A DNA stretch of 64,000 bases from Octopus sinensis. Lineage: Eukaryota. The translations under genes were made by a program, and so were the position numbers. The notes under the pieces are model-generated. The model did no database searches, was not told the origin of the DNA, and was given only the letters and a program-made list of their open reading frames with translations. Below are positions 1,774 to 63,400 of the stretch, piece by piece (within the stretch, counting starts at the first letter, position 1; each line of letters starts with the position of its first letter). The stretch covers positions 26,474,001-26,538,000 of the forward strand of contig NC_043000.1 in assembly GCF_006345805.1 (NCBI RefSeq). Reading direction: 5' to 3'.

Positions 1774-2342
1774 GCTAATATATATATATATGCATGTATG
1801 TATAACAATTACTTATACACCATGTATATCTTCTATAGTTATATTGTATAGTTATGTAGCTGATAATTAGTAGCGTGGCAGGTAGAGCCCAGCGGTTTGG
1901 CCGGGCTGACACTTTTGGTTCTGCTGTATAAGCTTTTTTAAAATTGAGGGCTCGAAAGGGGTTGCAGAATTGAGGGTTGCCTCGAGTAGCACACACTCTA
2001 GCTACGTCACTGCTTACGACCGAGAGAAAGGAGTAAATTAAAGGGGAGTGAAGGTTTCATAAAGAGTAATTATGAATTCGTTGTACAATTCCACTGCATC
2101 TTGTTTCAACGTGATTCCTGACAAACCGACGACGGAGTCTCTATGTGGTCTGTTGGCAAGCTAGAAACCGCAGCTAAATCTCTTTCAACCACAACCGACT
2201 GTTTTAAAACTGAAAGCCTCAGCAACAGAATGTAGCCGAAGAGATTGTAAACGGCGGTACTTCCAAGCCTGGAAAACATTGGCTTTAAATTTTCGCACAC
2301 GACCAGCAGGTTTGAATGGGGATGGGGGTGGGGCGGGGGGGG

Positions 2343-2698
2343 GGGGGTAATCGATCACAACGACGCAGTATTCAATTGGTACTTATTTTATCGACCCCGA
2401 AAAGATGAAAGGCAAAATCGACCTCGTCGGAATTAGAACTCTGAACGTAAAGACAGGCGAAATACCTATTTCATTACTGCCCACAAAGGGCTACACACAG
2501 AGGGGACAAACAAGGACAGACAAACGGATTAAGTCGATTACATCGACCCCAGTGCGTAATTGGTACTTAATTTATCGACGCCGAAAGGATGAAAAGCAAA
2601 GTCGACCTCGGCGGAATTAGAACTCAGAACGTAAGGATAGACAAAATACCGCCAAGCATTTTGCCCGGCGTGCTATCGTTTCTGCCAGCTCGCCGCCT
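2343..2698 (-). mobile_element. SINE-A dimer (head + unit with tail A + unit)
   Basis: Head ggcggcgagctggcagaaacgatagc on the minus strand; unit junction gaaatag|gtatttcg at 2466/2465. Confidence 0.85.
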
Positions 2699-3112
2699 TA
2701 AACCTAGAAAATACTAGCTTATAGGTTTTCTCTATTCGGGGCAGTCCTTGGGCTAAAAGAATAATCATACACGCACCGAGCGCAAGTGCGCACATCCATA
2801 TATATTATGTATGTATGTACATGTTGTCTGTATGCGTGTGTTTCAGTGCGTAATATTGATCGCCGTAAGATAATGTCCCGGTTCGGCAAATCAGCAATCA
2901 GCGTTCGAACATTGCTGTAGGACATTTTCATTAAGACTTTTTTTTTTTTTTATCAAAAACAGAAAAAACAAAAATATGAATGCCACGCATTCTATTTCAC
3001 ACGAAGATGTACTTTATGTGAAAGTTGCCCGTGGATAGAATATCTGTGACCAGGAAAGCTCAGCCAGTTCATTGTCTTAGCATTAAGTGGATGGGATAAA
3101 TCGCCCGCGCAC

Positions 3113-8527: not shown

Positions 8528-8587
8528 TTGTATAAAGTATGTACAAAGACTAAACCCAATCTTTTTTGAAGTAAGAAGCGATATATT

Positions 8588-8717
8588 TTTTCTACTCTAG
8601 GCACAAGGCTCGAAATTTTTGGGGAGGTGGCCAGTCAATTAGATCGACTCCAGTACGCAACTGGTACTTAATTTATCGTCCCCGAAAGGATGAAAGGCAA
8701 AGTCGACCTCGGCGGAA
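8588..8717 (-). mobile_element. 5'-truncated SINE-A with 16-bp target-site duplication
   Basis: taagaagcgatatatt at 8572-8587 and 8718-8733 flanks the SINE-A core + tail B. Confidence 0.9.
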
Positions 8718-10687: not shown

Positions 10688-10698
10688 AATTACCATTA

Positions 10699-11310
10699 AG
10701 GCAGTGAACTGGCAGAATAGTTAGCACGCTGGTCGGAATGCTTAGCGGTATTTCGCCTGTCGCTACGTTCTGAGTTCAAACTCTGCCGAGGTCGACTTTG
10801 CCATTCGTTCTCTCGGGAGTTAAATAAATTAAGTACCAGTTGAACTCTGGGGTCGATGCAATCGATTCATCCCCACCTCCCTCAAGCTAACCCTTTTGTG
10901 GAAAAAAAATTGAAATAATAATAATAATAATAATAATAAGTAAGGCGGCCCGCTGGCAGAATCGTTAGCACGCCGGAGGAAATGCTTGGCAGTATTTCGT
11001 CTATCTTTATGTTCTGAGTTCAAACTCCGCCGAGGTCGACTTTGCCTTTCGTCCTTTCAGGGGTTGATAAATTAAGTACCATTTACGTACTGGAGTCGAT
11101 CTAATCGACAGGCCTACATCCCCAAAATTTCAGGCCTTGTGCCTAGAGTAGAAAAGATTATTTATTAAGGCGGCGAGCTGGCAGAATTGGTAGCACGCGG
11201 GGTAAAAATACTTAGCGGCATTTCGTCTGTCTTGAGGTTCTGGGTTCAAATTCCGCCGCGGTAGACTTTGGTATTAATCCTTTCGCTGTCGATTATATAA
11301 ATACATGTTG
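10699..11310 (+). mobile_element. Three head-to-tail SINE-A copies
   Basis: Heads at ~10699, 10944 and 11169 with A-box-like TGGCAGAAT and B-box-like GAGTTCAAA, separated by A/T-rich or (AAT)n spacers. Confidence 0.85.
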
Positions 11311-13364: not shown

Positions 13365-13608
13365 GCTCATAAGGGCCGGTTTCCCGGTTTCCTTGGCGTA
13401 TAGGTTCCCCACCTGGACGGGACGCTGGTCCGTTACAGGAGGAAAGAGTGAGAGAAAGTTGTGGCGAAAGAGTCAACAGAAGTTCGCCATTACCTTTTGC
13501 CGGAGCCGCGTGGAACTTAGCTGTTTCGCTCATAAATACACACATCGCCCGGTCTGAGATTCGAACCCGAGAGTCCGCTGCTCTAACCACTAGGTCACAT
13601 GTCTCCAC
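13365..13608 (-). mobile_element. SINE-C head + E tail
   Basis: Minus strand: gtggagac..agtggttagagcagcggactc..gttcgaatc..ctctcactctttcctc|ctgtaacggaccagcgtcccgtccagg..ggaaaccgg. Confidence 0.75.
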
Positions 13609-13765
13609 ATCTATACATATATATATAAATATATAATATAAGACAATCAGTTAGTTGCCATAATAATACTCAGAGTTTCAGATGCCCGAGCTAAAGGCTA
13701 CTAACTGATTGTCCTGTATTATATATTTATAGATGAATTCCTCTATTTATTTAACATTCATTCTT

Positions 13766-13833
<68 letters not shown>

Positions 13834-14099
13834 CCTACCTACCTACCTACCTACCTACCTACCTACCTATCTAAGCGAATAGTGATGTAGGAAGTCGTTT
13901 GCGGTACTAAAGCGATGCTTTATTGTATCTACCTGCAAGGGATTTAAAACAACAAAGTTGACATCAGAGGGATCTGAACTTAGATTGCTAAAAACTCCCA
14001 AAGAACTACCGCAAGACATTCTTTTTGACAGTTCAACTATTCTGAACAATTCATACATGCATGTCTCTCTGTCTGTCTTTCTGTATGCATGTATGTAAG

Positions 14100-14367
14100 A
14101 ATTTGAACTCAGAACGGAAAGACAGATGAAATACATATTTCTTTACTACCCACTAGGGGCTAAACACAGAGAGGACAAACAAGGACAGACAAACGGATTA
14201 AGTCGATTATATTGACCCCAGTGCGTAACTGGTACTTAATTTATCGACCCCGAAAGGATGAAAGGCAAAGCCGACCTCGGCGGAATTTGAACTCAGAACG
14301 TAACGGCAGACGAAATACGGCTACGCATTTCGCCCGACGTGCTAACGTTTCTGCCAGCTCGCCGCAT
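14100..14367 (-). mobile_element. SINE-A, head + unit + start of a second unit
   Basis: Tail A followed by gtatttcatctgtc..gagttcaaat; junction at 14135/14134. Confidence 0.85.
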
Positions 14368-14730: not shown

Positions 14731-15772
14731 TGTATAACGATATTCAATAGTTTGGTCGATCCCGTGATACTATGATATACATATGAAATATAATACAATA
14801 TTAAAGAAGAAGAAGAAGAAGAAGAAGAAGAAGAGAAGAAGAAGAAGAAGAAGAAGAAGAAGAAGAAAGAAGAAGAAGAAGAAGGAAAAACTGTAACATC
14901 ACCTGCGGCATCCGTACGCGGCCTCTGCTGCAAACTGTACTGCCGATAGTAATCTCTGCACCAGAGTGACATCCCAACTTAAACCTTCCACATTAATAGG
15001 CTTAACCTAAATTCTACGCAGCTTGTCACCAAATTCTGCTCGCAATGTATCGGTCAACGCCTGGCTACTATGGAAGACTGGTTGCTCAAAGGTGTAAGCA
15101 ATATGATTGAACAGGAAACAATGCAGTTTTAAAGCGAACTTCTTCACCACGTATCCAAGCTTGCGGCTTCATATATAACACATATTGCCCACCCCATGAT
15201 ATATATTCTTGGCAAGAGGTTATATCTGAGATGGCGCATTGAGAAATGTAATTTCAGATTTTGTTTCGAGTTATAATGTATCATTCTTTTGGCACGCTTT
15301 TTAATTATTCTTCAATTAAATATTTTTATTTTTAGATATTGGTATAAAAGTCTCCGGTGACACCTCTGATCTCTGAACTCCCTCCCCTCTGTGTGTATGT
15401 GTGTATGTATATATATATATATATGCGTATGTGTATGTGTGTGTGTGTCCAAGCATGCGTGTATTTGTAATCTAATTTAGACTGACATGTTTTAAGTTAT
15501 TTTAAGCAAATTAAATTTAAATCTTACTCTCTCGTTGGTATATGTCATTTGTGAGTGTTTGTGCGCGCGCATATATTTCGCCGGGAGACTTCATCCAAAC
15601 CAGTGTGGGTTCGCTTGTTACGTATGAAACGCAAATCTAATGCGCTGTAGGAGTTATTCTCCTGCGTAACCCGACGCCATCTTCGATCAATATCGCCAAC
15701 TTGCTTAACAACTGGTTAGCGATGAGCGATGGTTCTGTAATTGAATTATTTTACTAGAATATATTTTACTAC

Positions 15773-16089
15773 TACGTGGAGGCGCAATGGTCCAGTGGTT
15801 AGGGCAGCGGACTCGCAGTTGTAGGATCGTGGTTTCGATTCCCAGACCGGGCGTTGTGAGTGTTTATTGAGCGAAAACACATAAAGCTCCACGCGGCTCC
15901 GGCAGGGGGTGGTGGTGGCGATCTCTGCAGTACTCTTTCGCCACAACTTTCTCTCACTCTTTCTTCTGTTGGCCTGCTCGCTTAGCCAGCGGAGTGGCGT
16001 CATTTGAGGGCTAAAACAATGCGAAGCGCATTGTGACCAGCGATGTGTAGTAACATCTGATAGCCTGGTCGGTCACAGTGTTCACGGTG
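15773..16089 (+). mobile_element. SINE-C head + F tail with 10-bp TSD
   Basis: tRNA-like head cgtggaggcgcaatggtccagtggttagggcagcggactcg..gtttcgattccc; atattttact at 15761-15770 and 16090-16099. Confidence 0.85.
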
Positions 16090-16791
16090 ATATTTTACTG
16101 TATATATTGGTTACATATTCACCGCCAGTAGTTTGAATAGATTCCATATTATAAAAATAAAAGAAGAAACACACACACTTTCAAATGTTATTAAAAGCAC
16201 TCAGCTTACTGGATCATTGTATTGCCGTTTACTTCAGTTTATTCACTTTTTATATCGCTAACTTAAATATTGTGCTTGAGTGCAACCGATGAGATATGTC
16301 CATATCGATAATAGAAAATGAGGCTTCTACCAATGATGGACAAAATATATAAAAATACTGTGCAGGCTCTGTCATTGGTGAAGGAATATGGCTTCATTAC
16401 ATGTACCATGCTTTCGCCAATCCTTTTAGAAGCCTGTATAGTTGTGAGCAAGTCCACCTTAATCCAGCTGATCATTTAGGACGTGATAGCTAGAGAAAGA
16501 GGGGGAGGGGACTGAGAGATAGAGATAGAGATAGAGAGGGAAAGAGAGGGAGAGAGAGAGCGAGAGAGAGAGAGAAGTAAGGATTGTACTAACATCTAGT
16601 TAGTGCTTATTGCAGTGGAATTGAATCTAAAAATGTGAAATGATGAAATGAATTAACTTGCTTTTAGATGAAGAGTGACACCAAGGCCAGGAATTGAAAT
16701 CACGACCTTACGGTCATGAGACGAATACTCGTAACCACTAAGGTAGGCCAGGTGCTTTCAAAAAGGAAAAAAGCAAAACAAAGCAAAACAT

Positions 16792-16985
16792 AGTAAAGAA
16801 ATAGGTATTTCGTCTGTCGTTACGTTTTGAGTTCAAATTCCGCCGAGGTCGACTTTGTCTTTCATCCTTCCGGGGTCGATTAAATAAGTACCATTTACGC
16901 ACTGGCGTCGATCTAATTGACTTAATCCCTTTTTCTGTCCTTGTTTGTCTCCTCTATGTTCAGACCCGTGGGCAATAAAGATATA
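16792..16985 (+). mobile_element. SINE-A internal unit preceded by only ~13 nt of an upstream tail A
   Basis: agtaaagaaatag|gtatttcgtctgtc at 16804/16805; no head present. Confidence 0.8.
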
Positions 16986-17442
16986 AATATTTAATTTTAC
17001 TTGCAATAGCCAGTTCTTTTAGTCAAACTATCGTATCTCCAGTTGCTTCAGATGCCATGATATGAAAATGATCAAAGTGTAGTACAACGGTTGAGCATTT
17101 TTCACATACGACAGTTTCGCAAACATATTTCTGACTGAAAATATCGTACATGCATGGAGTTACGATTTTATGCACCCAACAAAGTATTATTGTTAAGCTG
17201 AAACTGTTGCTAATGTAAAAAGGAATGGAATGGTGAAACTATTTTTTTCTGTTTTCTGAAAAAGCAACGTTTTGCACTTACGACACTTTCGCATAATAGC
17301 AACGATTATATATATACATTTAAAATAATAAAGATGAAAAATTGAATATTAATTTGATTAATATCAATTTAAAACCAATGGCCTAGCATATAGAAAAATC
17401 TGAAGTTTCAGAAAAATTATATTACATACATACATAAATATA

Positions 17443-17516: not shown

Positions 17517-18241
17517 TGTATTTTCTTTACTGTATCTCTATATTATTACTTGTAAGTCCACATACATACATACATGTTTATAATTGTGCCAATATGGAGT
17601 CAGCTGAAATAGGGCAGCTTATAAGCACCATATAACTGGGTCTCATTATGTTTTTAAGCCACCGCCCCACACTATGGGATAATATTTCTTGATAGAACCG
17701 GATTATAACGTTCTTCAGGTCCGGCACATCTAACATTTGTTTGTAACATCTGTTGAAATAACTGAATGTATTCTAGTTCGTTCTGTTTTAATTCCAGAAT
17801 CACATTTGTAGACGGAGCTTTAGTCTGAACCTCCTGCCTAACTGTATTCCTTTATTCCTCTATTCCTCATAAACCGTTCTCCGTTGACAAGCATTAATCC
17901 GTTAGTAGGACTTGCTGTTTTTCTAATCCCCTCTTTCGCAGTTATATATCACATCTGTTGATAGGGAGCAAGTAATATTTTTAAGCCTTTCACTGTCAGC
18001 TGAAGATCACATCTATTGGTAGGAGCGTGAGCTTTAAGTCCATCCCCGGTAATTATACATCACATTCGTTGACAGAGATGAAGAGGCATTTAAGCCTCTC
18101 TTCGTCAGCTATTCATCATGTCTGTTGCTATCAGTAGAATATGTTTGCATGACATGAAAAACGGCAGGAATGCACTAACATGCAGAGGTGCATCATAATC
18201 ATTCCCTCCCCTTTTCTTTGTTGAATATTTTACAATGTAAA

Positions 18242-18975
18242 GGCGGCAAGCTGGCAGAAACGTTAGCACGCCGGGCGAAATGCTTAGCGGTATTTCGTCT
18301 GCCGCTGCGTTCTGAGTTCAAATTCCGCCGAGGTCGACTTTGCCTTTCATCTTTCGTGGTTGATTAAATAAGTACCAGTTATGCACTGGGGTCGATATAA
18401 TCAACTTAATCCGTTTGTCTGTCCTTGTTGTCCCCGCTGCGTTTAGCCCCTTGTGGGTTGTAAAGAAACGTCTGTCTTTACGTTCTGAGTTCAAACTCCA
18501 CCGAGGTCGACTTTGCCTTTCATCCTTTCGGGGTCGATAAATTAAGTACCAGTTACGCACTGGGGTCAATGTAATCGACTTAATACCTATGTCTGTCCTT
18601 GTTTGTCCCCTCTATGGTTAGCCCATTGTGGGTAATAAAGAAATAGGTATTTCGTCTGTCTTAACGTTCTGAGTTCAAATTCCGCCGAGGTCGACTTTGC
18701 CTTTCATCCTTTCGGGGTCGATAAATAAAGTACCAGTTACACCTTGAGGTCGATGTAATCGACTTAATCCGTTTGTCTGTCCTTGTTCATCCCCTCTATG
18801 TTTAGCCCCTTGTGGGTAGTAAAGAAATAGGTATTCCGTCTGTCTTTATGTTCTGAGTTCAAACACCGCCGAGGTCGACTTTGCCTTTCATCCTTTCGGG
18901 GTCGATAAATTAAGTACCAATGGCGTACTGGGGTCGATCAAATCGACCGGCCCCTTCCCCCAAAATTTCGGAAAA
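18242..18975 (+). mobile_element. SINE-A tetramer flanked by one 17-bp TSD
   Basis: gaatattttacaatgta at 18223-18239 and 18976-18992; unit junctions at 18469, 18647 and 18831. Confidence 0.92.
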
Positions 18976-19324
18976 GAATATTTTACAATGTATACAACTT
19001 CAAAATATTGGCTCTTTCTTCAAATCAATGCACAGAACAACTCAAGCAAATTTATTCATTGAATGCATTCATTTGCACGCGCTGTATATCAAAATTACCA
19101 TATAGATGTAATAATCCATACATCTATTTAAAGTATTATGAAAGTCAATATATGAACCTTAGCTATAAGTGAATAGATCTTCACCGAAATCTCTTTGGTT
19201 ATATTTTAGTGTGTTTAACAAAAACAGTGTAATGTCATGAACTGATTAAGAGTTCGTACATCTTTGATGTTCTTTCGACCTCCGTATTAGTCCACAATGT
19301 AGCGTTTTATATTTTCAGTAAAAG

Positions 19325-19665
19325 GGTAAAGAACCCCTTCGGTCATGATGACCATGAGAATGCCACTAGAAAGTTACCCCATAAGGCACAAGTCCGGGCG
19401 AGGTTGTTCACGGAAGACCAGTAGTTTCCAGTGCATACCAGCCTCCCCTCTCCACGCCACTAATGTTGTCCAAGGGTAAGGTAAAGGCCGATACAGCTTG
19501 GCACCAGTGACGTCGCAACTCATTTCAACAGCTGAGTGAACTGGAGCAACGTGAAATAAAGTGTCCTGCTCAAGTGCGCAACGCACAGCCCGATCCGGGA
19601 ATCGAACTCACTACCTCATGATTGTGAGCCCGACGCTCTAACCACTGATCCATGCCCCTTCACAT
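19325..19665 (-). mobile_element. SINE-D (tRNA-like head gtgaagg..agtggttagagcgtcg, D tail)
   Basis: Near-identical copies at 20585-20920, 33130-33440 and 63135-63400. Confidence 0.85.
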
Positions 19666-20584: not shown

Positions 20585-20920
20585 AGGAAACACCTTCGGT
20601 CATGAATGACCATGGAATTGCACCTAGAAAGTTACCCTCCGAGGCACAAGTCAGGGCAAGATTGTGTGTGGAAGGCAAGCTGTCGCCCATGCATACCAGC
20701 CTCCCTTCTGCACATCACTGATGTTATCCAAGGGAAAGGCAAAGGCCGATACAGCTTGGCACCAGTGATGTCGCAACTCATTTCTATAGCTGACTTAACT
20801 GGAGCAACGTGAAATAAAGTGTCTTACTCAGGAACACAGCGCACAGCCCGGTCCGGGAATCGAAGTGACAACCTCACGATCGTAAGCTCGACGCTCTAAC
20901 CACTGAGCCAATCGCCTTCA
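20585..20920 (-). mobile_element. SINE-D
   Basis: Homologous to 19325-19665. Confidence 0.85.
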
Positions 20921-21011: not shown

Positions 21012-22210
21012 CACACACACAATCCATTATATATAAAGAACAGTTCATCAACTGCATAGGCTTGTTCAGGCTATATCACAGATGTATATCGCATTTTTAA
21101 AACTACATATCATTTAAATTATGTCGCAGTTTTACGAGCGATCCTACTCAGCTAGAGAAATTGAGACACATCTCAGTGCTTTGATACGGATGTTAGCAAA
21201 TAGCAGACTTGGGCTATGGAAGAACTTGCACTCAAAACTTGTAGATCTAAGAGCAATCCTGTCTTCCCATTGCTTGTGGGACGATTACACGCAAAATGTC
21301 CAACAGACTTCCATTGCCCACGGGAACACTAATACAGTATAACAGGTATAGGCTTTTTCTCAGAGTCAATGTGGCTTATGATGTAGTTCATTGTACGAAT
21401 ATACGTAACGGAAATCTGATGAACGCCTTATAATCTCAGATACTTGCTGCCCAAACTATTCGTTGATAGATTCAAGACAAGTCAATGAATGATAAGCAAA
21501 TACGTTATCGATCTTTCATAAATGAAAGGCATAGCAGACGTGAAAATGAATTGAATTCAGGACAACAAAGCACCGAACTATATAAAACATACAGATTATC
21601 TCGCTGGCAGCAGACGACACTGATTTCACTGATTAATGTTTCCCATAGATAATATATCCACCATTCATGTTTTAGTTTCGTATTTTCTTTCTATATTTCT
21701 GTCCTTCTGCTTCAATCTCTCTCTCTCTCTATCTGTTCTCTTCTGCTTTTATTTCCATCTTTTCTCTTTTCCTTTCTCTTCTTCTCTTTCTGCCACTTAC
21801 TCTATCACTCAAATTTTCTCTGTCCATGCACATATAAGATATAATACGATTATCAGTGCTCCGTTAATCCATCTTTGACACTAAAGACGCAACAGTAAAT
21901 TTCTCCATTGGACAATTCACCAAGCAGATTGCACAATTTTTTTATTGTTTGTACGATTTGTTTCCAGCTTATTCTGTGTCTGTCAGATTACATATCCATC
22001 TCTCTAATGACCTACACAACACTAGGTTTATGTTGAAGTAAAGACAAAGACGTACGTCTCACTAAAGTTCGTTTCTAATAAAGATCTACCTCGAGCTTAA
22101 AAAGAACCATTTCTCTATCAAGATTATGAGTTTTTAAAGGAGACATCTTGATTAAAACTCTGCATCGTTAAACAAAAACATTTATGAACAAAAACCGTTT
22201 ATAAACATGA

Positions 22211-22478
<268 letters not shown>

Positions 22479-22484
22479 ATAATA

Positions 22485-22569: not shown

Positions 22570-24416
22570 GTGCTAGCCAAGAGGTTGGCGCTTGTCATCG
22601 AGAAACTGGTCGACAAGGCGCAAACATGCGCCGTGCCAGGCCGGACCATCCATGACAACCTCCATCTGATGCGCTACATCATAGACAGGGTAGTTAACGA
22701 ACCTGGCATGGGTGGGGCCCTGATCAACTTGGATCAATCGAAAGCCTTTGATAGGGTAGACCATCGATACTTGGAGGCAGTCCTGAGAGCGGCTGGTTTC
22801 GGTCCCGTCTTCCGCGGCTGGATAGCTGCCTTGTACAGAGGCATCCGTTCGGTAATTCGCGTAAATGGACATCTATATCGAGACCTTTCGACATTGCACG
22901 TTCGGTTCCGTCAGGGATGCCCCCTCTCGGCGCTTCTATACGTATTGACTCTTGAGCCACTACTGCGGAAGCTGGCGACTCTAAGGGGCATCCCGCGAGA
23001 AATGGGATGCGGGACGAGCGTGTCTGCATACGCGGACGACGTCACCGTCATAGTGTCTAGCCACGAGCACATCGAGCTGGTCGGCGAGACACTGAAAAAC
23101 TACGAAGCGGTGACAGGAGCGAAAATCAACCGGGAAAAGTCAGTGGCTTGCGACTAGGCCCTGGAGAAGCAAGCCCATGCCGTCCACCAGCGCCTCCGTC
23201 GTGGGACGCTGGACCGACGGCCCGGTTGAGTTGCTCGGGGTCTGGTTCGGTTCCGGACCTCCAAGTGGAGAAGAACTGGAACGAGATAACGAGTAGGGTG
23301 GTCACTCTCGCCCGGCAATGGGCCGAGAGGAAACTGTCCCTAAAAGGTCGAGCGGAGGTGGCGAACACGTACATCGCGTCCGTCATCTACTACCGCCTGA
23401 CCGTCGTACCTTGTCCCGACCCTACCATCACCAAACTACAACGCATCCTCTTTCGCTTCTTGTGGAAAGGATGCGTCCCGATGGTCAGGCGATCCATTTG
23501 CTGTCAACACCCGTTAAAAGGAGGGCTGGGCATGCCGTGGTTGATGATGCGCAGACACGCGCTGAGACTGCGACATCTCTGGCTCTATGTAGACGACGGT
23601 GAACAGGTGTGGTCGCCGTTTGTGAGGCACGCTTTCCCGCAGCTCGTCTCCATGACCGAACTGCAGTCGTGGATCAAAAAGAGGCCGAGGAAGGGCGAAT
23701 GGCACCGCGAGTGTCGCGTTGCTCTCAAGCAACTCTGCCGTCCTGGGTCGACCTTAAGTGACTTCAACACAACCAAAGCATTCTATAGGGGTTTAGTGGA
23801 GGGGAGGTACGACGACGAGCTCGGGGCGAACCTGGACGTCGACGAGGAGTACCTGACCCGCCTGTTCGGGACGACTTTCGGGCCAGGGCCCATGGACAAC
23901 TTCCAGAGATCCCTGGCCTGGCAGTGCTACCGAGAAGCGCTACCCGTTCGGGATAAGCTCTACAGACACGGCTCGAGAAACACGGGGCCGACCTGCCCGA
24001 GATGCGGTCAGAGCGACGAAACGTTCTTTCTGCACGCACTCGTTCAGTGTCCAACAATTTCCGACCTGTGGGCTTGTGTCGAACAACTGCTGTCACGTGT
24101 GGGACGAGTCGGTTTATCAGCTGAGTCTATCGTCAATATTGTCACGCCTCCTTCCTTCAAACGGGAAGGAAGAGCTATTTTCATCATCCTTGTGGCTATG
24201 GCGAAAGAATGTATCTGGTGGACGCGTCTGAAAGGATTGGAGACAAACACTTTCCTCTCTGGTCAATCTCTCATCAACTTCTTCAAGTACCACTTGAAAA
24301 GGAAAGTGAGAGTAGAGAGGCAAGTTTTGTCTAGCGAATGTTTTAAAAAAAGATGGGTGGATGTAGCAAGAATGGCACGTATGAATGACGAAGCCACCTT
24401 GAGCATAGTCCTATGA
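22570..24416 (+). pseudogene. ORF2 remnant (reverse transcriptase + C-terminal CCHC knuckle), frameshifted
   Basis: Motifs LDQSKAFDRVDH, RQGCPLS, YADD, KINREKS and CPRCGQSDETFFLHALVQC; small indels near 22876-22908 and 23146-23252. Confidence 0.9.
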
Positions 24417-24708
24417 ACCCAGAAATCGAAAACAGAGAGTTGCTTATTTGCAAAAAAAAAAAAAAAGAAATATAAAATGTGACTTCATTGACCGAGGTTA
24501 CCGTGGTCTTTTCCGTAGGCTTTTCTTTCCACAGGTAAACCTCACCTGTCCTCCCCTTTACACTTCATATTGACATTTCTGTGATAACGATCCCTATTGA
24601 TCAATTTTTTTTCCTCTCCCCCTTTTTTTTTAATTTTTTTAACCCCCCCCCTTTTTTTTGTCCTCTTTCTCTCCTTTTACGATCCCTTTTGATCGAAACT
24701 CTCCCCTT

Positions 24709-24760
<52 letters not shown>

Positions 24761-24832
24761 CTTCAAAAGAAAAGCTCTACCTTGTAATTTGTTCTATCTG
24801 TGTGCAGCCCTGTGTGGCTAATAAAGAAACAT
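22570..24832 (+). mobile_element. 5'-truncated L1/Tx1-type non-LTR retrotransposon inserted in (TCTA)n
   Basis: RT-encoding ORF2 remnant, ~415-nt 3' UTR with internal poly-T, ending AATAAAGAAACA directly on TCTA repeats; 5' end also abuts TCTA repeats. Confidence 0.93.
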
Positions 24833-24876
24833 ATCTATCTATCTATCTATCTATCTACCTATCTATCTATCCATCC

Positions 24877-24916
<40 letters not shown>

Positions 24917-24957
24917 GTCTATCTATCTATCTATCTATCTATTTATCTATCTATCCG

Positions 24958-25706
24958 TCGACACACCTACATGCCTATATATGTCTATACAAATACATCT
25001 GGTGATGTGGATATGAGCAAAGCCCACAAAACTTTAGCGTAGAACTGAGTGGAATTGTTAATAAATACGAGTAACTCCGACCTGATGCGCCCAATGTTTT
25101 CTTTCGTTTCTTCACTTAGTCGCATATGTATGGATGTCTCTTCTATTTTTTCAATTATTATAAATCTTCCACTGAGGAGGGAGCCGGTGTCCAACAAAGA
25201 TATAAGGCTCCATCTTTGGGATGTAGTTAATAGAGACAAATTCACATTTGGAACTTGAGAAAACTCTTGCATATTTTTATTCTTCCACTCACAGATCGAA
25301 CATGTAAACTACGAATTAGCCGGTCGATTTCTCTTTCTGAAAATCCCAGTTTACCCAGATTCTCCTTTAAGCATTTAGTAACAAAATCTAGTGCTCCAAT
25401 TATTATTGGTATGAATAGGAATTCATTGTCTGAATATAGAAGCTGGAGATTTCGAAGCAGCTGTACATAGATATCCTCTTTTTATTTGATTTTCAAAGAG
25501 ATATTTATATCTGCAGGGCAACTGACCTCTATGATGGTACATACCTTTGCCCCTCTGTCCCAAACAACAATAACTGGCCTGTTATGCTAACATTTGACAG
25601 AAGTTTTGATGGGAATATTCCACCAGTATTCCTTGAGTTGGTGTTTATGAATGTATTCCATAACAGAAAGATTTTCTAAGTTTATTTCAGGATAGTCTTT
25701 TTTGCG
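24958..25706 (-). pseudogene. 3' end of an RLE-clade (R2/R4/NeSL-like) non-LTR retrotransposon
   Basis: Minus frame reads WWNIPIKTSVKC*HNRPVIVVWDRGAKVCTIIEVSCPADINISLKIK*KEDIY..FIPIIIGALDFV..SVSGRIKICKSFLKFQM* (terminal stop 25242-25244), a decayed PD-(D/E)xK-type endonuclease region. Confidence 0.85.
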
Positions 25707-33045: not shown

Positions 33046-33129
33046 ACTGTAGGGATTAAACTGTCAAGCATAATACTGCCAGAATAATGCTATGGGTTCA
33101 GCACTATCAGAATAAGTATGTCGTAGTAT

Positions 33130-33440
33130 ATTGAGACCCCCTACGGTCATGACTGACCGTGTGATTGCACCTAGAAAGTTACCCTCCCAGGTACAAGTCC
33201 GGCAAGGTTGTTTATTGAAGACCAGCAGTCGCCCATGCATACCGGCCTCCCCTCTCACACCACTGATGTTATCCAAGGGAGAGGCAACAGCAGATACATT
33301 TCTACAGCTGAGTGAACTGGAGCAACGTGAAATAAAGTGTCTTGCTCAAGAACACCACACGCAGCCCGGTCCGGGATTGGAACTCACAACCTCACGATCG
33401 TAAGCTCGACGTTCTAATCACTGAGGCATGAACCTTCACA
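33130..33440 (-). mobile_element. SINE-D
   Basis: Homologous to 19325-19665. Confidence 0.85.
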
Positions 33441-34417: not shown

Positions 34418-35250
34418 TTTCATTTATTTGTCACAAGGGCGAAGGATGATGGGAACAATACAAAGACAGACAGAATATTGGGGTTTAGATATAATGAGAT
34501 GATAAAAAAATGTATACACGGTATACACTGAAAAACAAGGGACATATGTATAGCATACAATGGTTAAAAAAATGTCGGGGAGGATGATAGAGATGTGGCC
34601 CTCCTGATACTGGAAGGCCTCTAGGCATAATCGAGGAACCCTGCTATCCTAGATGTTCCTGAAACTCCAAGAGCAAGTACCCTCTTCAATTCATTCTCTC
34701 TGACTCAGACGTCTACCCTTGCCATTTTCGCTACTTTCACCTACTTTTCCATAGACTCACCCGAGGACAGCATCTCCCTCTCCACTCTAAATTTCCTTTC
34801 CAATTGGAACTTAAAGAAGTCAATGAGAGCTCTACCAAAGAGGACTGTATCTGTTCTCATGCCTTTCAGCCTTGTCCACCAAACAACCTCTTTCGCCACA
34901 GCCACCAGGCGAAGGAAAACTGCTTTGCCTGCCCGATTGAAGGTGGGCGGCGGGGCGATCATCACTGCATACTCAGCCGACAGACAGATCCGTCCCATAC
35001 GTGACAGTAGCTGTTCGACATAACGCTACAAGTCAACAATGCTCGGACACTGAACGAGGGTGTGCAGAACGGTTTCGTCACTCAGCGCGCACCTCAAACG
35101 AGCCCGTCTGACAGCACATCCATGCCCACCACCCGGTAGCACTGCCAGGCCAAAGACATCTGGAAATTATCCATGATAGTTCCCGACCGGAAAGTTCACC
35201 GGAACAGACTAGTCAGTCCGCTCTCGTCGGCGCCAATAGTCTCCCCGAGA
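34418..35250 (-). mobile_element. Diverged sister Tx1-type LINE 3' fragment
   Basis: MDNFQMSLAWQCYR, SDETVLHTLVQCP and AKEVVWWTRLKG align to the 23148 ORF; different 3' UTR ending gcccttgtgacaaataaatgaaa on (TTA)n. Confidence 0.85.
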
Positions 35251-36624: not shown

Positions 36625-36856
36625 AATACCTATTTCTTTACTTCCCACAAGGGGCTAAACACAGAGGGGACAAACAAGGACAGACAAACGGATTAAGTCG
36701 ATTATATCGACCCCAGTGCGTAACTGGTACTTAATTTATCGACCCCGAAAGGATGAAAGGCAAAGTCGACCTCGGCGGAATTTGAACTCAGAACGTAACG
36801 GCAGACGAAATACGGCTACGCATTTCGCCCGGCGTGCTAACGCTTCTGCCAGCTCG
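36625..36856 (-). mobile_element. SINE-A with tail A ending 5 nt into the next unit
   Basis: Minus strand ends gtaaagaaatag|gtatt and then unrelated sequence. Confidence 0.88.
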
Positions 36857-38399
36857 CTTCTTTCCAGTCCGATCACGGCTAATCTTAGACTACACAACAA
36901 CAAAAACAACGATAGCAACTACAACTGACTTATTTTATTAACCTTTTGATATATCAATACTAAATGCCTGTAGTTGATGGGTTTGGCACCAATCTAATTT
37001 TTGCATTGAAGTAAAAACAAAAAATAAAAAAAATAGTTAGAAAATCTCCAGACTTCTTTTATATTTATCTGAGTGATTTCACTGTCCCAGAAAGAAGAAT
37101 AATTATAAGAAATGTAGCCGACTTCAGGGTTAAGATAAGTTTCTACTATGTTGAAGTTTGATCTCAACTTCAATCTTGTCCCATCGAGAAAACGGTGTAA
37201 GTCGCAAGAAGGAGCATTGCTAATGGAGGAATATTGAGCTGATATGGTGGAGTAAAAATCTCCAAACATTTCCGTTGTATAAATATCTAATTGGTCACAC
37301 GGAATATATTTGCGTTCTGTGCCTGTTAACCGTTTCTAATAATGGCACCGGACAGGAAATTTTAATGGTGGAGATGTTAATTAATCACCGGTCTCTTTTG
37401 TTTGGTCGATATTTTATTTTATTGACCTTGGAGGAATGAAAAACGAAGATGACTCGCACGGGATTTGAACTTAGAAGGTAAACAGCAGGAAAAAAATATC
37501 GCAAAGTATTTTGTCTGAGTCTAACGATTTTACTAAGCTAACAGACTTTTAATTATCGATCCAAATTTAGGCACAAGGCAGGCAGATTTAGGGAAAGTGG
37601 GGTAAGCCGATTACATCGATCCCCAGTATTTAACTGGTACATTTTTTTCATCGACACCGAACGGATGAAAGTCAAAGTCGGCGTCGGTGGAATTTGAGCT
37701 CACAACATATAAGGAGCCGGAAGAAAGGCCACTCTGTCTTCCGATGCGCTAACGATTCTGCCAGCCCACCACCTTAATATGAGAGACAGAACCGATAAAA
37801 CTGAAATCATTTGTCTGACAAATACTTAATTTTTCTATCCCAGAAGGATTTAAGCAAAGTCGGGGCTGGCAAAATTTGAACTCAGAAAATTAAGGTGTTC
37901 ACTTTGCCGATAATACCTTCTAAAGAAAAAGAAAATATAGCTACTTATTGTGGATGTCTAAGCTTCAACATATCCAAACAGGCAGCAGATACTTTAGTAT
38001 GAATAATGAGAGGACGGTTTTTGACAATGGCGGAGCTTGCGTGTGTTGCTCGGAGCAGCAGTTAAATTTGTCGCCCCCGGGCCCCCTAGCCTATACAGCC
38101 TTATATACAGCCACTATAAAAGCGTTGCCCGGGGCGATCGACCCCTCGCCTAGCTACTATCAAAAACCAGTAGCTACGCAGCTGGGTTTTGATAGTCGTT
38201 AGTACGCGAAGATGTTAGACTCTCTGGTAAAAACGTGAATCGGACGAATATGTACGTGTGCGTATGAGAGTCCGCGTGTGTGGAGGTGTGCGTCCGGTTA
38301 CAAGAGTCCGCGTGTGTGAAGGTGTGTGTTCAGTTACAAACACACACACACACTAAAATGAGTACAAAAATTATTCTCGTGGTGGATTTGTGAGTGTAA

Positions 38400-46221: not shown

Positions 46222-47137
46222 TTGGTTCATAGGAAAGGAGAAACGGAATTGAGTGGCCTTGATTTATTTGTTCGTTCAGACCAGGAACGGAAATATTGCG
46301 CTTTTCGACCAGGAACCGAAATATTGCACTTTTCAATCCAATCATTTTGAGGATTGTGTAATGAAGTCAGAAATGACTGGATTGATAAACAGAGGTCCCT
46401 GATCGATGACAAATCTATCATTGTTTCACATAAGCTATAAAAAAAGGACAAAAAAACGAAACGAGAAATGTATTCTCTGTCGTTCTCAACGAGAAATATT
46501 CTGGCATTTCAATCAATTGAACTACCTACTCATTGTAGTAACGTAATCCTCATACAGAGTTTCCATGATACACTCTAACAAGGCTGACCCCTGGCCATTC
46601 TAGTTACGTGTACAATCCATCCGAGGCGCCTCCGCACAGTTTCTGTCTAGCTAATTTCACTCACAACGCTTGGTCGAACCGAACTAATGGAAAAATACAC
46701 TTGTTCAAAATATTACGTAGTAAGATCGAACCCGGGACATTATGACACCAGGACGAAATCCTTAACAACCCAGCCACGCCCACGCTGATAGTGGTACTCG
46801 TAGGAGTTTACATCACAAGCATGTATTATTAAGAATGTTGATAACATAAAGGGCGGGTAATTTAAAACCTATACTGGGACTGTTATACAGGTCAGGAGGT
46901 TTCCAATCAGATCCATGCAGCCAAATGAATCGAAACAGAATAGCACCCGATTACTCGGCAGAAATTACCCATAATGCTTTTGGCTGCAGAAAGTATAACC
47001 GAGCATCGTCCCCGTGAGTCCTTGGAGTTTGCGAAATGTCTTATCTACTCCACACACACACACACACAAGCACACACACACACACACACACGCAAACACA
47101 CACACACATACTTATATATATATATATATATATATAT

Positions 47138-47541
47138 ATTTCTTTATTGCCCATAGGAGGTTAAGAAACATAGAGGGGACCAACAAAGACAAAGCAATTA
47201 AGGCGATTACATCGACCCTAGTGCGTATCTGGTACTTATTTAATCGACCTCGGAAGGATGAAAGGCAAAGTCGCCCTCGGCGGAATTTGAACTCAGAACG
47301 TAACAGCAGACGAAATACCTATTTCTTTACTACTCACAAGGGGCTAAACACAGAAAGAACAAACAAAGACAGACAAACGGATTAAGTCGATTGTATCGAC
47401 CCCAGTATGTAACTGGTACTTAATTTATCGATCCCGAAAGGATGAAAGGCAAAGTCAACCTCGGCGGAATTTGAACTCAGAACGTAGCGGCAGACGAATT
47501 ACTGCTAAGCATTTCGCCCAGCGTGCTAGCGTTTCTGCCAG
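47138..47541 (-). mobile_element. SINE-A dimer, both units with tail A, ending on (TA)n
   Basis: Junction at 47319/47318; terminal gggcaataaagaaa abuts (TA)n. Confidence 0.88.
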
Positions 47542-48909: not shown

Positions 48910-49085
48910 TTTCAAGTTTCGGCACAAGGCCAGCAGTTTCGGGGATGGAGTAAGTAGATCACATCGACCCCCGTGCTCAACTGGTACTTATTTTATCGAC
49001 CCCGAAAGGATGAAAGCCAAAGTTGACGTCGGCGGAACGTAATGGCAGACGAAATGCCGCTAAGCATTTTGCTCGCCACCCTAAC
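48910..49085 (-). mobile_element. SINE-A monomer
   Basis: Core and tail B. Confidence 0.8.
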
Positions 49086-49374
49086 GATTTATATCATATT
49101 AATATAAACCATTGCAGCTTGTTATAAAACAGTGCTCTAATGAACCGAGAAGGACTCATTAGAATGTGAATACTCAGAGTTTCAATTTTTCTGTGGAAAT
49201 AGGAAATGATAATTAAGAGTCATTATGAAGAGTATTAATCAGCTCTTAAATAATTATCTCTTAATCAGCTCTTAATAGTACATAGAGAAAAAAGGGCGCA
49301 ACCATCTTGTGGTTTCCATCTGCAGAACGTTGTACATTCAAGTAAATGGTTTCTTCTTTTCTTCTTTTTCTTTT

Positions 49375-49799: not shown

Positions 49800-50445
49800 C
49801 TTTTCTACTCTAGGCACAAAGCCCGGAATTTTTGGGGAGGGAGCCAGTCGATTAGATCGTCTCCAGTACACAACTGGTACTTAATTTATCGACCCCGAAA
49901 GGATAAAAGGCAAAGTCGACCTCGGCAGAATTTGAACCCAGAACGTAAACACAGACGAAATACCGATAAGCATTTCGCCCGGCGTGTTAACGATTCTGCC
50001 ATCTCGCCGCCTTAATAGTAATTGCTATTATTAAGGCGGCGAGCTGGTAGAGTATTCCGCACGCTGGATGGAATGCTTAGCAGCATTTCATTCGTCTTTA
50101 CGTTCTGAGTTCAAATTCCACCGAAGTCGAATTGGCCTTTAATCCTTTTGGGGTCAATAAAATAAGTACTAGTTGAGCAGTAAAGTTAACATGATCGGTT
50201 AGTCCCCTCCCACGAAATTTCAGGCCTGTTCCTATTGTAGAGAAAAATTATTGAAGCCATGAGCTGGCAGAGTCGTTAGCACGCTGGACAAAATACTCAG
50301 CAGCATTTCACCCATCCTTACGTTGTGAGTTCAAATTCCGCCGAGGTCGACTTTGCACTTCATCCTTTTGGGATCAATGAAATAAGTACCTGTTAGCCCC
50401 ACTTCCTCCAAAATTTCAGGCCTTGTGCCTTTAGTAGAAAGGATA
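49800..50445. mobile_element. SINE-A inverted (head-to-head) pair plus a third copy
   Basis: Minus copy 49800-50011, plus copy 50035-50250, plus copy ~50258-50445. Confidence 0.88.
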
Positions 50446-60260: not shown

Positions 60261-60508
60261 GTAATAATAATAATAATAATAATAATAGTAATAATAATAA
60301 TAATAATTCATTTCTACTCTAGGCACAAGGCCCGAAATTTTGGGGGAGGTGGCCAATCGATTAGATCGAACAAAGTACGCAACTGGTACTTAATCTATCG
60401 ACCCCGAAAGGATGAAAGGCAAAGTCGACCTCGGCGGAATTTGAACTCAGAACGTAACCGCAGGCACCACTAAGCATTTCGCCCGGTGTACTAACGTTTC
60501 TGCAGCTC

Positions 60509-60567
<59 letters not shown>

Positions 60568-61131
60568 GGCGACTACAGTACCAGTGATTGTAGGATCTCT
60601 AGGAATGATAAAAAAAGGTACAGAAACCTATTTGAAAATGATACCAGGCTTACCATCCCTACAGGAAGTGCAAAAAATCGTGTTAACTGGAAAGACTCAT
60701 GTACTGAGAAGAGCATTATCGCTGTGAAAACAACATCCATCCTGTAAATTTGTGTGTGTAATCTGGGAATGCATACAATGAGCTTCTCTGCCCTAGGTGT
60801 ACGGAAAACACACGGCGAGAAACGGAAGAAAATTTGAAGAAAGAAAAAAAATAATGATAATAAAAATAATGCTCTCTACTATAGGCACAAGGACTGAAAA
60901 ATTTTTCGGGGAGGAGACTAGTCAATTGCACTGACCCCAGTATTTCACTGGTATTTAATTTATTGACCCCCAAAAGGATGAAAGGCAAAGTCGACTTTCA
61001 GCGGAATTTGAGCTCAGAATGTAAAGACGAATGAAATGCTACAAAGCATTTTTGCTTGGTGTGCTGACGATTCAATAAGCTTACCCCCTTACTACTACTA
61101 CTACTACTACTACTACTAATACTACTACTAC

Positions 61132-61174
<43 letters not shown>

Positions 61175-61860
61175 TCTTTCTATGATAGGCGTTGGGCCTG
61201 GAATTGTAGGGAAGGTGGACTAAACGATTACATCGATTCCAGTGTTTGATTGATAGATATTTCATTGTTCCTGAAATGATGAAAGGCAAAGTTGACCTTG
61301 GGGGCATAGAAAGGGCCGTGACTAAATACCACAGAGCATTTTACCTGGCGCTCTAACGATATTTTCAATAATAATAATAATAATATTAATAATAATATTA
61401 TTAGCAATAATAATAATGCTTTCTACTATAAGAACAAGGTCTGAAATTTTGGGTAAGTACGCTACTGGTATTTAATTTATCCACTCCGAAAAGATGAAAG
61501 GAATTTGAACTCAGAACGTAGCGACAGACGAAATACCTATTTCTTTACTGCCCACAAGGGGCTAAACATAGAGGGGACAAACAAGAACAGACCAACGGAT
61601 TAAGTCGATTATATCGACCCCAGTGCGTAACTGGTACTTCTTTAATCGACCCCGAAAGGATGAAAGGTAAAGTCGACCTCGGCGGAATTTGAACTCAGAA
61701 CGTAGCGGCAGACGAAACACCGCCAAGCATTTCGCCCGGCGTGCTAACGATTCTGCCAGCTCGCTGCCTTAATAATCCTTCATACAATGGGAACAAGGCC
61801 TAGAATTTTGGGGGAGGGGATGAGTCGATTTCATCGATCTCAGTACACAACTGGTATTTA
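60030..61860 (-). mobile_element. Stack of about seven SINE-A copies or fragments separated by (TAA)n
   Basis: Copies at ~60030, 60310, 60875, 61180, 61425 (with unit junction 61537/61536) and 61775, all on the minus strand. Confidence 0.85.
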
Positions 61861-62760: not shown

Positions 62761-63134
62761 AGATAGATAGGTAGATACTTCCATCCATCCATCATCCATC
62801 CATCCATCCAACCATCCATCCATACATACATACATCCATACATACATACAACTGTCTTTCATACAATTTCCGTCTGCCAAGTTCACTCACTAGGTTTATG
62901 GTCGAACGGGAGCCCAAGGTTTCGCATAGTGGGACAACTGGAAAATACGAGGTTGCAGAATGAGTTTCTTGACCATACAGCCATAACTGCGCCTGTATTA
63001 ATTACTATTTTATCATATCTATAATTGTTTCTTTTTGACTAAATCCTAAAAACGCCCTCACCTGCCAATACTAAATAACACAAAACATATTTGTCTGACA
63101 TTCTACTGTATTTTTTTGTATTAATCACACTGCT

Positions 63135-63400
63135 GCTGAGACCCCTTTCGGTCATGGCTGACCATGGGATTGCACCTAGAAAGTTACCCTCCCAGGCCTC
63201 TCCACGCCACCAGTGTTATCCAAGGGAAAGGCAAGGCACCTGTGACGTCGCAACTCATTTCTACAGCTGAAGGAACTAGAGCAACGTAAAATAAAGTGTA
63301 TTGCTCAAGAACACAGCACGCAGCCCGGTCCGGGATTCGAACTCACAACCTCACGATCATAAGCTCGACGCTCTAACCACTGAGTCATGCGATTTCACAT
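63135..63400 (-). mobile_element. SINE-D with internal deletions
   Basis: Homologous to 19325-19665. Confidence 0.8.

What the first reader, a model, noticed from the sequence alone, without database searches (positions are those of the whole stretch)
18223..18992. SINE tetramer apparently retrotransposed as one 735-nt molecule
Seen: one tRNA-like head plus four cores (~184-bp period; three end in tail A, the last in a shortened tail B) are bracketed by a single 17-bp direct repeat. Each unit carries its own B-box but only the first has an A-box. There are many TTT runs but no TTTT until the flanking TSD. Established: TTTT terminates Pol III and a TSD brackets one insertion event. Inference: a variable-copy-number concatemeric SINE transcribed as one Pol III RNA, a design that may be undescribed.
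Basis: partly seen in the sequence, partly recalled or inferred. Interest (0 to 1): 0.8.

Follow-up and report, generated by a model that had tools for sequence, protein, structure and literature searches.

The report
Four-unit octopus SINE, one insertion
This is a real 736-base copy of an octopus short interspersed element (SINE) whose 184-base inner module is repeated four times between one pair of target-site duplications; it is an unusually long example of a known kind of oligomeric SINE, not a new class of element.

Summary
Bases 18240-18975 (736 nt) consist of one 69-nt head, three units ending in "tail A" (173, 184 and 184 nt), and a fourth 126-nt unit with a shortened "tail B". An exact 17-bp direct repeat brackets the whole. 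The family's A-box-like motif occurs once, a B-box occurs four times, and there is no TTTT inside.

New findings:
- Tail A resembles the 3' end of an (ATT)n-tailed LINE in the same window, so each unit ends in a LINE-like tail.
- Six other copies in the window also carry the module, totalling 2 units where the copy is complete. All share the same junction, and every full module is exactly 184 nt.
- Units inside this locus are not each other's closest relatives (0% bootstrap). The terminal tail-A units of two other loci cluster at 81%.

This favours mobilisation of a pre-formed multi-unit element in one event over recent in-place expansion. An old in-place duplication of units 2 and 3 is not excluded.

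Transcription as one Pol III RNA is untested. "Undescribed design" is overstated: quasi-oligomeric and complex SINEs are known. No orthologous or additional genomic copies could be retrieved. Interest is moderate.

The parts
18223..18239 (+). 5' target-site duplication GAATATTTTACAATGTA
   Evidence: It is an exact 17/17 match to 18976-18992. It abuts the full-length 5' end AAGGCGGC, which other full-length copies share.
18240..18308 (+). Head of 69 nt. It holds the only A-box-like motif (18250-18259) and, at 18289, the GGTATTTCGTCTG segment where the repeated module starts.
   Evidence: It differs from the consensus head of the tail-A copies at 2 of 69 positions (my reading of the alignment). 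ARAGORN and Rfam do not call it a tRNA.
18309..18481 (+). Unit 1 (173 nt): B-box at 18314, body, then tail A with an 11-nt junction deletion.
   Evidence: Its variant pattern at family-polymorphic alignment columns 58, 61, 90 and 133 differs from units 2 and 3.
18482..18665 (+). Unit 2 (184 nt): B-box at 18487, body, tail A, junction ...GAAATAGGTATTTCGTCTG.
18666..18849 (+). Unit 3 (184 nt): B-box at 18671, body, tail A, junction.
   Evidence: It is 89.7% identical to unit 2, no closer than to units of other loci.
18850..18975 (+). Unit 4 (126 nt): B-box at 18855, B-type 3' body, and tail B with an internal deletion of about 18 nt, ending ...TTTCGGAAAA.
   Evidence: by comparison with the monomer tails at 8611, 49823 and 60332.
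18976..18992 (+). 3' target-site duplication. It contains the first TTTT downstream of the element (18981-18984).
2278..2699 (-). Related two-unit copy 'A': head, a tail-A unit, then a B'-type unit. A probable decayed TSD lies at 2700-2712 and 2265-2277 (10/13 match).
47137..47541 (-). Related copy 'E': 5'-truncated head plus two tail-A units, ending in (TA)n(TG)n.
   Evidence: Its second unit clusters with unit C1 at 81% bootstrap.
16791..16990 (+). Related copy 'C': starts inside the tail A of an upstream unit (5'-truncated), then a junction and one terminal tail-A unit.
61440..61772 (-). Related two-unit copy 'F' (tail-A unit plus B unit), lying in a head-to-tail SINE cluster joined by (ATT)n.
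14099..14365 (-). Related copy 'B': head, one tail-A unit, a junction, and the first 17 nt of a second unit.
   Evidence: Its head subtype is shared with copy D.
36625..36857 (-). Related copy 'D': head, one tail-A unit, and the start of the next junction.
34418..35025 (-). 5'-truncated LINE copy ending in (ATT)n. Its last 55 or so nt resemble tail A, making it the candidate partner-LINE type.
   Evidence: Its ORF is 63% identical to the reverse-transcriptase/zf-RVT LINE ORF at 23148-24416. The 3' end aligned to tail A scores 34, against 15.8 +/- 2.5 for shuffles, with 0 of 2000 reaching it.

Best explanation
The locus is one copy of an octopod SINE family. The family has an A/B-box head, a conserved body, and a 3' tail resembling that of an (ATT)n-tailed LINE.

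In one lineage of the family ("SINE-A") a 184-nt module has become a tandem repeat. The module comprises the last 20 nt of the head, the B-box, the body and the LINE-like tail A. The founding junction joins the end of tail A (...GAAATAGGTATT) to GGTATTTCGTCTG inside the head. All later copies inherit that junction and the exact 184-nt period.

Arrays of 1-3 tail-A modules exist at different loci, usually closed by an ordinary tail-B unit.

The four-unit array at 18240-18975 was most likely already multi-unit in its source RNA. At minimum it already had a distinct first unit, a later unit and the B unit. It went in by a single target-primed reverse transcription event that made the 17-bp TSD.

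Shown:
- the anatomy;
- the TSD;
- the LINE-like tail;
- variable unit number between loci;
- the units of this locus are not each other's closest relatives;
- positional clustering between two other loci.

Inferred:
- module number changes by in-register recombination or reverse-transcriptase template switching in source lineages;
- transcription starts at the head's Pol III promoter and reads through because the sequence lacks T4.
For: - There is a single exact 17-bp TSD, placed exactly at the full-length 5' end and at the family's ...GAAAA 3' end. Two monomers have the same kind of TSD: 16 bp at 8572/8718 and 13 bp at 48889/49082.
- Six further loci in the 64 kb carry the module, with the identical junction and an exact 184-nt unit length.
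- Copy C starts inside the tail A of an upstream unit, as a 5'-truncated copy of a multi-unit RNA would.
- Units C1 and E2, each the last tail-A unit of its element, cluster at 81% bootstrap, whereas E1+E2 cluster at 0%.
- Units within this locus are 83.8-89.7% identical to each other, against 81-91% between loci. They differ at 6-11 sites where both states are also present in other loci. T monophyly has 0% bootstrap support.
- Tail A matches a LINE 3' end.
- The family avoids T4: 0 of 2000 shuffles lack TTTT.
Against: - Only seven tail-A loci from one window were available, and no orthologous or allelic sequence.
- The phylogeny is star-like and most differences are private to a unit. An old in-place duplication followed by independent decay is hard to exclude, especially for units 2 and 3, which share the same states at two diagnostic sites.
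- Copy A's two units share a private B-box variant (TTCTAA), which shows that units within a locus can be related or homogenised.
- A 736-nt Pol III transcript would be longer than any SINE consensus in SINEBase, where the maximum is 662 nt.
- The last unit lacks about 18 nt of the LINE-like tail.
Confidence: 0.5

Rival explanations
1. A shorter element of two or three units inserted here and made the TSD. The array later grew in place, by unequal crossing-over or replication slippage between the 184-nt modules. The tetramer was therefore never one RNA.
For: - In-register duplication keeps both the outer TSD and the 184-nt period.
- Units 2 and 3 share the G (alignment column 90) and A (column 133) states and have the same length.
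- Most differences between units are private (13-18 per pair), as expected after long independent decay.
- The parts of the element are roughly 3-12% from consensus, so the copy may be old (my reading of the and 48 alignments).
Against: - T1+T2+T3 form a clade in 0% of bootstraps and T2+T3 in only 11%.
- Unit 1 differs from units 2 and 3 at four family-polymorphic sites.
- An exact 17/17 TSD is mildly unexpected if all of the roughly 8% divergence arose after insertion. I estimate about 2 hits expected in the 34 bp.
- Multi-unit copies with positional clustering exist at other loci.
Confidence: 0.22
2. There was one insertion event but not one RNA. The LINE reverse transcriptase began on a tail-B SINE RNA. 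It then switched template, within the shared body or at the GGTATT microhomology, onto tail-A SINE RNAs one or more times, building a chimeric array during reverse transcription.
For: - The units are as different from one another as random family members.
- There is a single TSD.
- The last unit is B-type only in its 3' half.
- Copy A ends in a different (B') subtype behind the same junction.
- GGTATT is shared by the end of tail A and the head.
- Contig L014 shows a different tail-A-to-B junction.
Against: - All seven intact junctions are identical, with no variable (ATT)n between units, and every full unit is exactly 184 nt. That points to an inherited junction rather than repeated end-to-end jumps.
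- C1 and E2 cluster at 81%.
Confidence: 0.13
3. The array was built by serial independent insertions: 5'-truncated SINEs landed one after another in the (ATT)n tail of the copy before. The outer 17-bp repeat is then the TSD of the first insertion only.
For: - The family clearly targets its own (ATT)n tails. Head-to-tail clusters lie at 10698-11304 (three copies) and 60332-61860 (five copies).
- L014 has a 5'-truncated B unit directly behind a tail A.
Against: - True neighbours in those clusters are full-length and separated by variable (ATT)n.
- Here there are three junctions, and five more at other loci, all at the same nucleotide with no spacer.
- 5' truncation points are normally variable.
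Confidence: 0.07

Closest known systems
Quasidimeric and quasi-oligomeric SINEs as defined in SINEBase (for example quasidimeric B1, and the CHRS family with a ~20-nt motif repeated more than 10 times)
   Same: An internal segment of one SINE is tandemly duplicated, and copies or subfamilies differ in repeat number.
   Different: The repeated segment here is 184 nt, nearly a whole SINE: B-box, body and LINE-like tail. It is not a short motif or a 29-nt duplication. The 736-nt copy is longer than the longest SINEBase consensus (662 nt).
Complex (dimeric or trimeric) tRNA-derived SINEs, for example the colugo t-SINE/CYN monomers, dimers and trimers (cited in PMC4758252)
   Same: Monomer-to-trimer series of head-to-tail units propagate as single retroposons.
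   Different: There each unit is a full tRNA-like monomer with its own A and B boxes. Here only the first unit has the A-box-like motif, and each unit carries a body and a LINE-like tail.
SVA-type composite retroposons with an internal VNTR (from my own knowledge)
   Same: A non-autonomous, LINE-mobilised element whose internal tandem-repeat copy number varies between copies, changing both before and after insertion.
   Different: SVA is transcribed by Pol II, polyadenylated and L1-dependent, with VNTR units of 35-50 bp. Here there is a Pol III-type head, 184-nt units and an (ATT)n-type tail.
Octopus tRNA-derived SINEs OK, OR1 and OR2 (Ohshima and Okada 1994; OR2 is listed as a CORE-SINE in PMC4758252)
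   Same: Octopod host, A/B-box head, and interspersed at high copy number (about 25 copies in 64 kb).
   Different: Similarity of this body to the CORE domain was not demonstrable.
Metazoan retrozymes (tandem 170-400-nt repeats with hammerhead ribozymes; PMC7761336, listed)
   Same: Short tandem arrays of units about 180 nt long in invertebrate genomes.
   Different: No hammerhead or other ribozyme match was found on either strand at E <= 10. The element has a TSD and a SINE head.

Membership tests
SINE (LINE-dependent, Pol III-type non-autonomous retroposon) | Short (<1 kb), interspersed, many copies | tested here: met
   About 25 copies on both strands in 64 kb. This copy is 736 nt.
SINE (LINE-dependent, Pol III-type non-autonomous retroposon) | 5' head derived from tRNA, 7SL or 5S RNA, with internal A and B boxes | tested here: inconclusive
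   The B-box-like GAGTTCAAATTCC is clear. The A-box-like GCTGGCAGAA is weak. ARAGORN at default thresholds and Rfam find no tRNA. ARAGORN calls the consensus only at an 80% threshold.
SINE (LINE-dependent, Pol III-type non-autonomous retroposon) | Flanked by target-site duplications of variable sequence | tested here: met
   A 17-bp TSD here, and 16-bp and 13-bp TSDs at two monomers.
SINE (LINE-dependent, Pol III-type non-autonomous retroposon) | 3' region shared with a partner LINE and/or a simple-repeat tail | tested here: met
   Tail A aligned to the 3' end of the (ATT)n-tailed LINE at 34418-35025 scores 34, against 15.8 +/- 2.5 for shuffles (0 of 2000 reach it). Monomers end in (ATT)n.
SINE (LINE-dependent, Pol III-type non-autonomous retroposon) | Transcribed by RNA polymerase III | not testable with these tools
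   The only evidence is indirect: the consensus and this copy avoid T4.
Quasi-oligomeric SINE (SINEBase sense) | Tandem duplication of an internal segment, with repeat number varying among copies | tested here: met
   A 184-nt module is present 2-4 times, with an identical junction, at seven loci.
Complex dimeric/trimeric SINE (t-SINE/CYN type) | Each unit is a complete small-RNA-derived monomer with its own A and B boxes | tested here: not met
   The family's A-box-like motif occurs once, and units 2-4 begin 49 nt into the head.
CORE-SINE superfamily (MIR, OR2) | Conserved ~65-nt CORE domain in the body | tested here: inconclusive
   Local alignment to a human MIR consensus recalled from memory was no better than shuffles.
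Metazoan retrozyme | A hammerhead ribozyme in each tandem unit | tested here: not met
   There was no ribozyme family among the Rfam matches at E <= 10 on either strand.
Tandem-repeat-bearing MITE or Helitron-type element (as in bivalves) | Terminal inverted repeats or Helitron ends, with short fixed-length TSDs | tested here: not met
   No terminal inverted repeat was found, only two internal imperfect pairs. The TSD is 17 bp and the 5' end is a SINE head.

The most novel reading that the evidence does not exclude
The family may propagate as heritable "trains" of variable length. A single Pol III promoter in the first unit would drive transcripts of more than 700 nt through T4-free modules. 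Each module would carry its own B-box and its own LINE-recognition tail. Reverse transcription could then start at any internal tail, giving shorter copies such as C and E that end in tail A, and could slip in register, giving longer ones. Unit number would then be an evolvable trait of the element. This would be the longest Pol III-driven SINE on record.
Probability: 0.3. Interest if true: 0.55.

Novelty: new variant of a known kind. Interest (0 to 1): 0.4.

Why it matters
SINEs make up about 11.6% of the Octopus vulgaris genome, and most of its recently active SINE families are unclassified (PMC13282606). A module that is almost a whole SINE and repeats 2-4 times would inflate and fragment automated SINE family counts. 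It would also blur age estimates and be mis-scored as tandem repeat.

If multi-unit RNAs are really made and mobilised, the family offers a natural system to study three things:
- how long a Pol III SINE transcript can be;
- whether internal LINE-like tails can prime reverse transcription;
- how reverse-transcriptase template switching changes repeat number.

If not, it is an ordinary minisatellite-like expansion inside a retroposon.

Tried and rejected
- Collecting more copies. A tail-A pattern scan of viral contigs gave 5 hits and of metagenome contigs 8 hits. All were chance matches with no SINE similarity by BLAST. A family-wide degenerate 25-mer found nothing in bacterial and archaeal genome contigs.
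- Retrieving copies through antisense ORFs. A search with the consensus antisense ORF spanning a junction found one protein, on a 543-bp metagenome contig, L014. It was useful but is a single copy.
- Orthologous or allelic locus. The nearby LINE ORF is not on record as a called gene, and no conserved host exon was evident among the ORFs. The empty-site test could therefore not be run. A paralogous empty site was sought by joining the flanks and was not found.
- CORE-domain membership: not demonstrable.
- Retrozyme or hammerhead: rejected. tRNA gene: rejected.
- Terminal-inverted-repeat element: rejected.
- Literature. No paper in the library contains these sequence strings or describes multi-unit octopus SINEs.
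- 3' ends of related LINE copies from metagenome contigs (L015-L017). They gave only weak or partial matches to the tails under strict scoring, so the LINE-tail link rests on the in-window copy.

Full report
**What is there**

The window is AT-rich (38.8% GC), full of microsatellites, and carries about 25 copies of one SINE family on both strands. A LINE ORF in the window is 97% identical over 38 residues to an Octopus bimaculoides protein and 58-60% identical to Argonauta hians proteins, so the host is an octopod.

The flagged element is as described.
- An exact 17-nt direct repeat, GAATATTTTACAATGTA, lies at 18223-18239 and 18976-18992. It encloses 736 nt.
- The 736 nt are a 69-nt head followed by units starting at 18309, 18482, 18666 and 18850, of 173, 184, 184 and 126 nt.
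- Tandem Repeats Finder gives period 184, 3.6 copies, 84% matches.
- The family's A-box-like motif occurs once and the B-box-like motif four times.
- There is no T run of 4 or more inside, despite 22 TTT runs. None of 2000 dinucleotide shuffles is free of TTTT (mean 8.9 positions).
- ARAGORN and Rfam do not recognise the head as a tRNA, so it is "tRNA-like" only loosely.

**The family**

The ordinary monomer ("B") is head + body + tail B, ending ...CAGGCCTTGTGCCTAGAGTAGAAAAGATTATT(ATT)n.
- Monomers often sit head-to-tail, joined by (ATT)n: three at 10698-11304 and five at 60332-61860. The family therefore inserts into its own tails.
- Two monomers have clear target-site duplications (TSDs) of 16 and 13 bp. 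Like the 17-bp one here, they start AT-rich immediately after ...GAAAA.
- The fourth unit of the tetramer has B-type 3' body variants. Its tail B lacks about 18 internal bases but keeps the terminal GAAAAGAAT.

**What tail A is**

Tail A aligns with the last 55 or so nt of a 5'-truncated LINE copy at 34418-35025 (minus strand), which ends in (ATT)n.
- The alignment scores 34, against 15.8 +/- 2.5 for shuffles, and 0 of 2000 shuffles reach it.
- That LINE's ORF is 63% identical to the reverse-transcriptase/zf-RVT LINE at 22570-24416.

So each 184-nt module is nearly a whole SINE: the last 20 nt of the head, the B-box, the body and a LINE-like 3' tail. The junction between modules joins the natural end of tail A (...GAAATAGGTATT) to GGTATTTCGTCTG in the head. 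The two share GGTATT.

**Other multi-unit copies**

Six more loci in the window carry tail A, and none is a clean monomer.
- A (2278-2699): tail-A unit plus a B'-type unit, with a probable decayed TSD (10/13 match).
- F (61440-61772): tail-A unit plus B unit.
- E (47137-47541): two tail-A units, with a 5'-truncated head.
- C (16791-16990): starts inside an upstream tail A, then one terminal tail-A unit.
- B (14099-14365) and D (36625-36857): one unit plus the start of a second.

Every intact junction is the same, and every full module is exactly 184 nt. True neighbouring insertions in the clusters, by contrast, are full-length and separated by variable (ATT)n. The junction therefore looks inherited from one founding event rather than re-made each time. 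That argues against serial tail insertions and against repeated end-to-end template jumps.

The one external copy recovered, L014, has a tail A followed by a B unit truncated at a different point. Such fusions do recur, but with other junctions.

**Was the tetramer one insertion of a pre-formed array?**

A single TSD is compatible with that. It is also compatible with later in-register duplication inside the element.

The results favour a pre-formed array:
- Units of this locus are 83.8%, 84.4% and 89.7% identical to each other, against 81-91% for units of different loci.
- They differ at 6-11 sites where both states also occur in other loci, the same range as between-locus pairs.
- In neighbour-joining bootstraps T1+T2+T3 group 0% of the time and T2+T3 11%.
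- C1 and E2, each the last tail-A unit of its element, group 81% of the time, whereas E1+E2 group 0%.
- Copy C is what a 5'-truncated copy of a multi-unit RNA would look like.

Together these favour arrays being propagated as arrays. At the least, unit 1 and the later units were already different when this element formed.

There are caveats.
- The tree is star-like and most differences are private to a unit.
- Units 2 and 3 share the states at both diagnostic sites, so an old in-place duplication of one of them cannot be excluded.
- Copy A's two units share a private B-box variant, so within-locus relatedness or homogenisation does occur.
- The exact TSD is only mildly informative. I estimate about two hits expected in its 34 bp if all of the roughly 8% divergence arose after insertion.

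**Pol III**

The family consensus, including the LINE-derived tail, avoids T4, which fits Pol III transcription. Other decayed copies in the window carry 17 T runs of 4 or more in 4447 nt. On that rate a clean 736 nt has P about 0.06, which is suggestive only. Nothing here shows that a 736-nt RNA exists. SINEBase's longest consensus is 662 nt.

**Comparison and novelty**

SINEBase defines quasidimeric and quasi-oligomeric SINEs, citing the CHRS motif repeated more than 10 times with variable number, and complex dimeric or trimeric SINEs. This element fits the quasi-oligomer definition.
- It is not a t-SINE-type multimer, because only one unit has the A-box-like motif.
- It is not a retrozyme, because there is no hammerhead.
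- It is not a terminal-inverted-repeat element.
- CORE-SINE membership could not be shown.

What is unusual is the size and content of the repeated module, a near-complete SINE with its own LINE-like tail, and the total length. I rate it a new variant of a known kind, of moderate interest.

The decisive tests could not be run with the collections on hand. They are a genome-wide census by unit position, orthologous or allelic loci, and RNA sizing.

Noticed in passing
window 17949-18140: Just upstream of the element lie three to four diverged tandem units of about 55-60 nt, each starting TCACAT(C/T)..GTTG (starts at 17949, 18007 and 18060). They are too diverged for Tandem Repeats Finder, and their nature is unknown.
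   Followed up: no
window 10698-11304 and 60332-61860; also 49823-50174: SINE monomers sit in same-orientation head-to-tail clusters (3 and 5 copies) joined by (ATT)n, which implies insertion into earlier copies' tails. One head-to-head inverted pair is separated by about 20 bp.
   Followed up: partly
window 18582-18590 versus 18643-18651: Unit 2 has three clustered private substitutions (AATCCGTTTG to AATACCTATG). They create a perfect 9-nt reverse complement of ATAGGTATT at its own junction (pair I2). This looks like a templated quasi-palindrome mutation rather than three point changes.
   Followed up: partly
window 18302-18311 versus 18434-18443: Unit 1's tail A carries CCGCTGCGTT, identical to the 3' end of this element's own head and found nowhere else in the window. 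It involves three clustered changes relative to the other tail-A units, which suggests short-tract conversion within the element.
   Followed up: partly
window 22570-24416 (+), 3' end to 24955; motif also at 1225-1422, 22207-22482 and 24658-25005: A LINE with reverse-transcriptase and zf-RVT domains, with a break in frame near 23150, ends in a different 3' region: a T46 run at 24711-24756 and a (TATC)n tail. The same 3'-end motif next to (TATC)n/(ATCT)n recurs at three other places, so it is a second microsatellite-tailed LINE type.
   Followed up: partly
protein P0006; locus L014: A protein annotated as coming from a Herbaspirillum metagenome-assembled genome is 62% identical to this octopod LINE ORF. 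A 543-bp ENA metagenome contig is an octopod SINE. Both are probably host DNA contaminating metagenome assemblies.
   Followed up: no
window 19374-19607, 20606-20823, 33067-33400, 63079-63267; and 13373-13633, 15749-16072: Two further interspersed repeat families are visible as recurring ORF-like strings (for example ...DTLFHVAPV.SA.EMSCD.TGAKLYRPLP..., and ...SERKLWRKS...CRSRVEL...). They were not classified.
   Followed up: no
window 2278-2340 (minus strand): The last unit of copy A has a long C-rich expansion (CCCCCCCCCCCCCGCCCCACCCCCATCCCC) where other copies have CCTCCCC. Its tail is of the older B' type, also seen at 48937-49089.
   Followed up: partly
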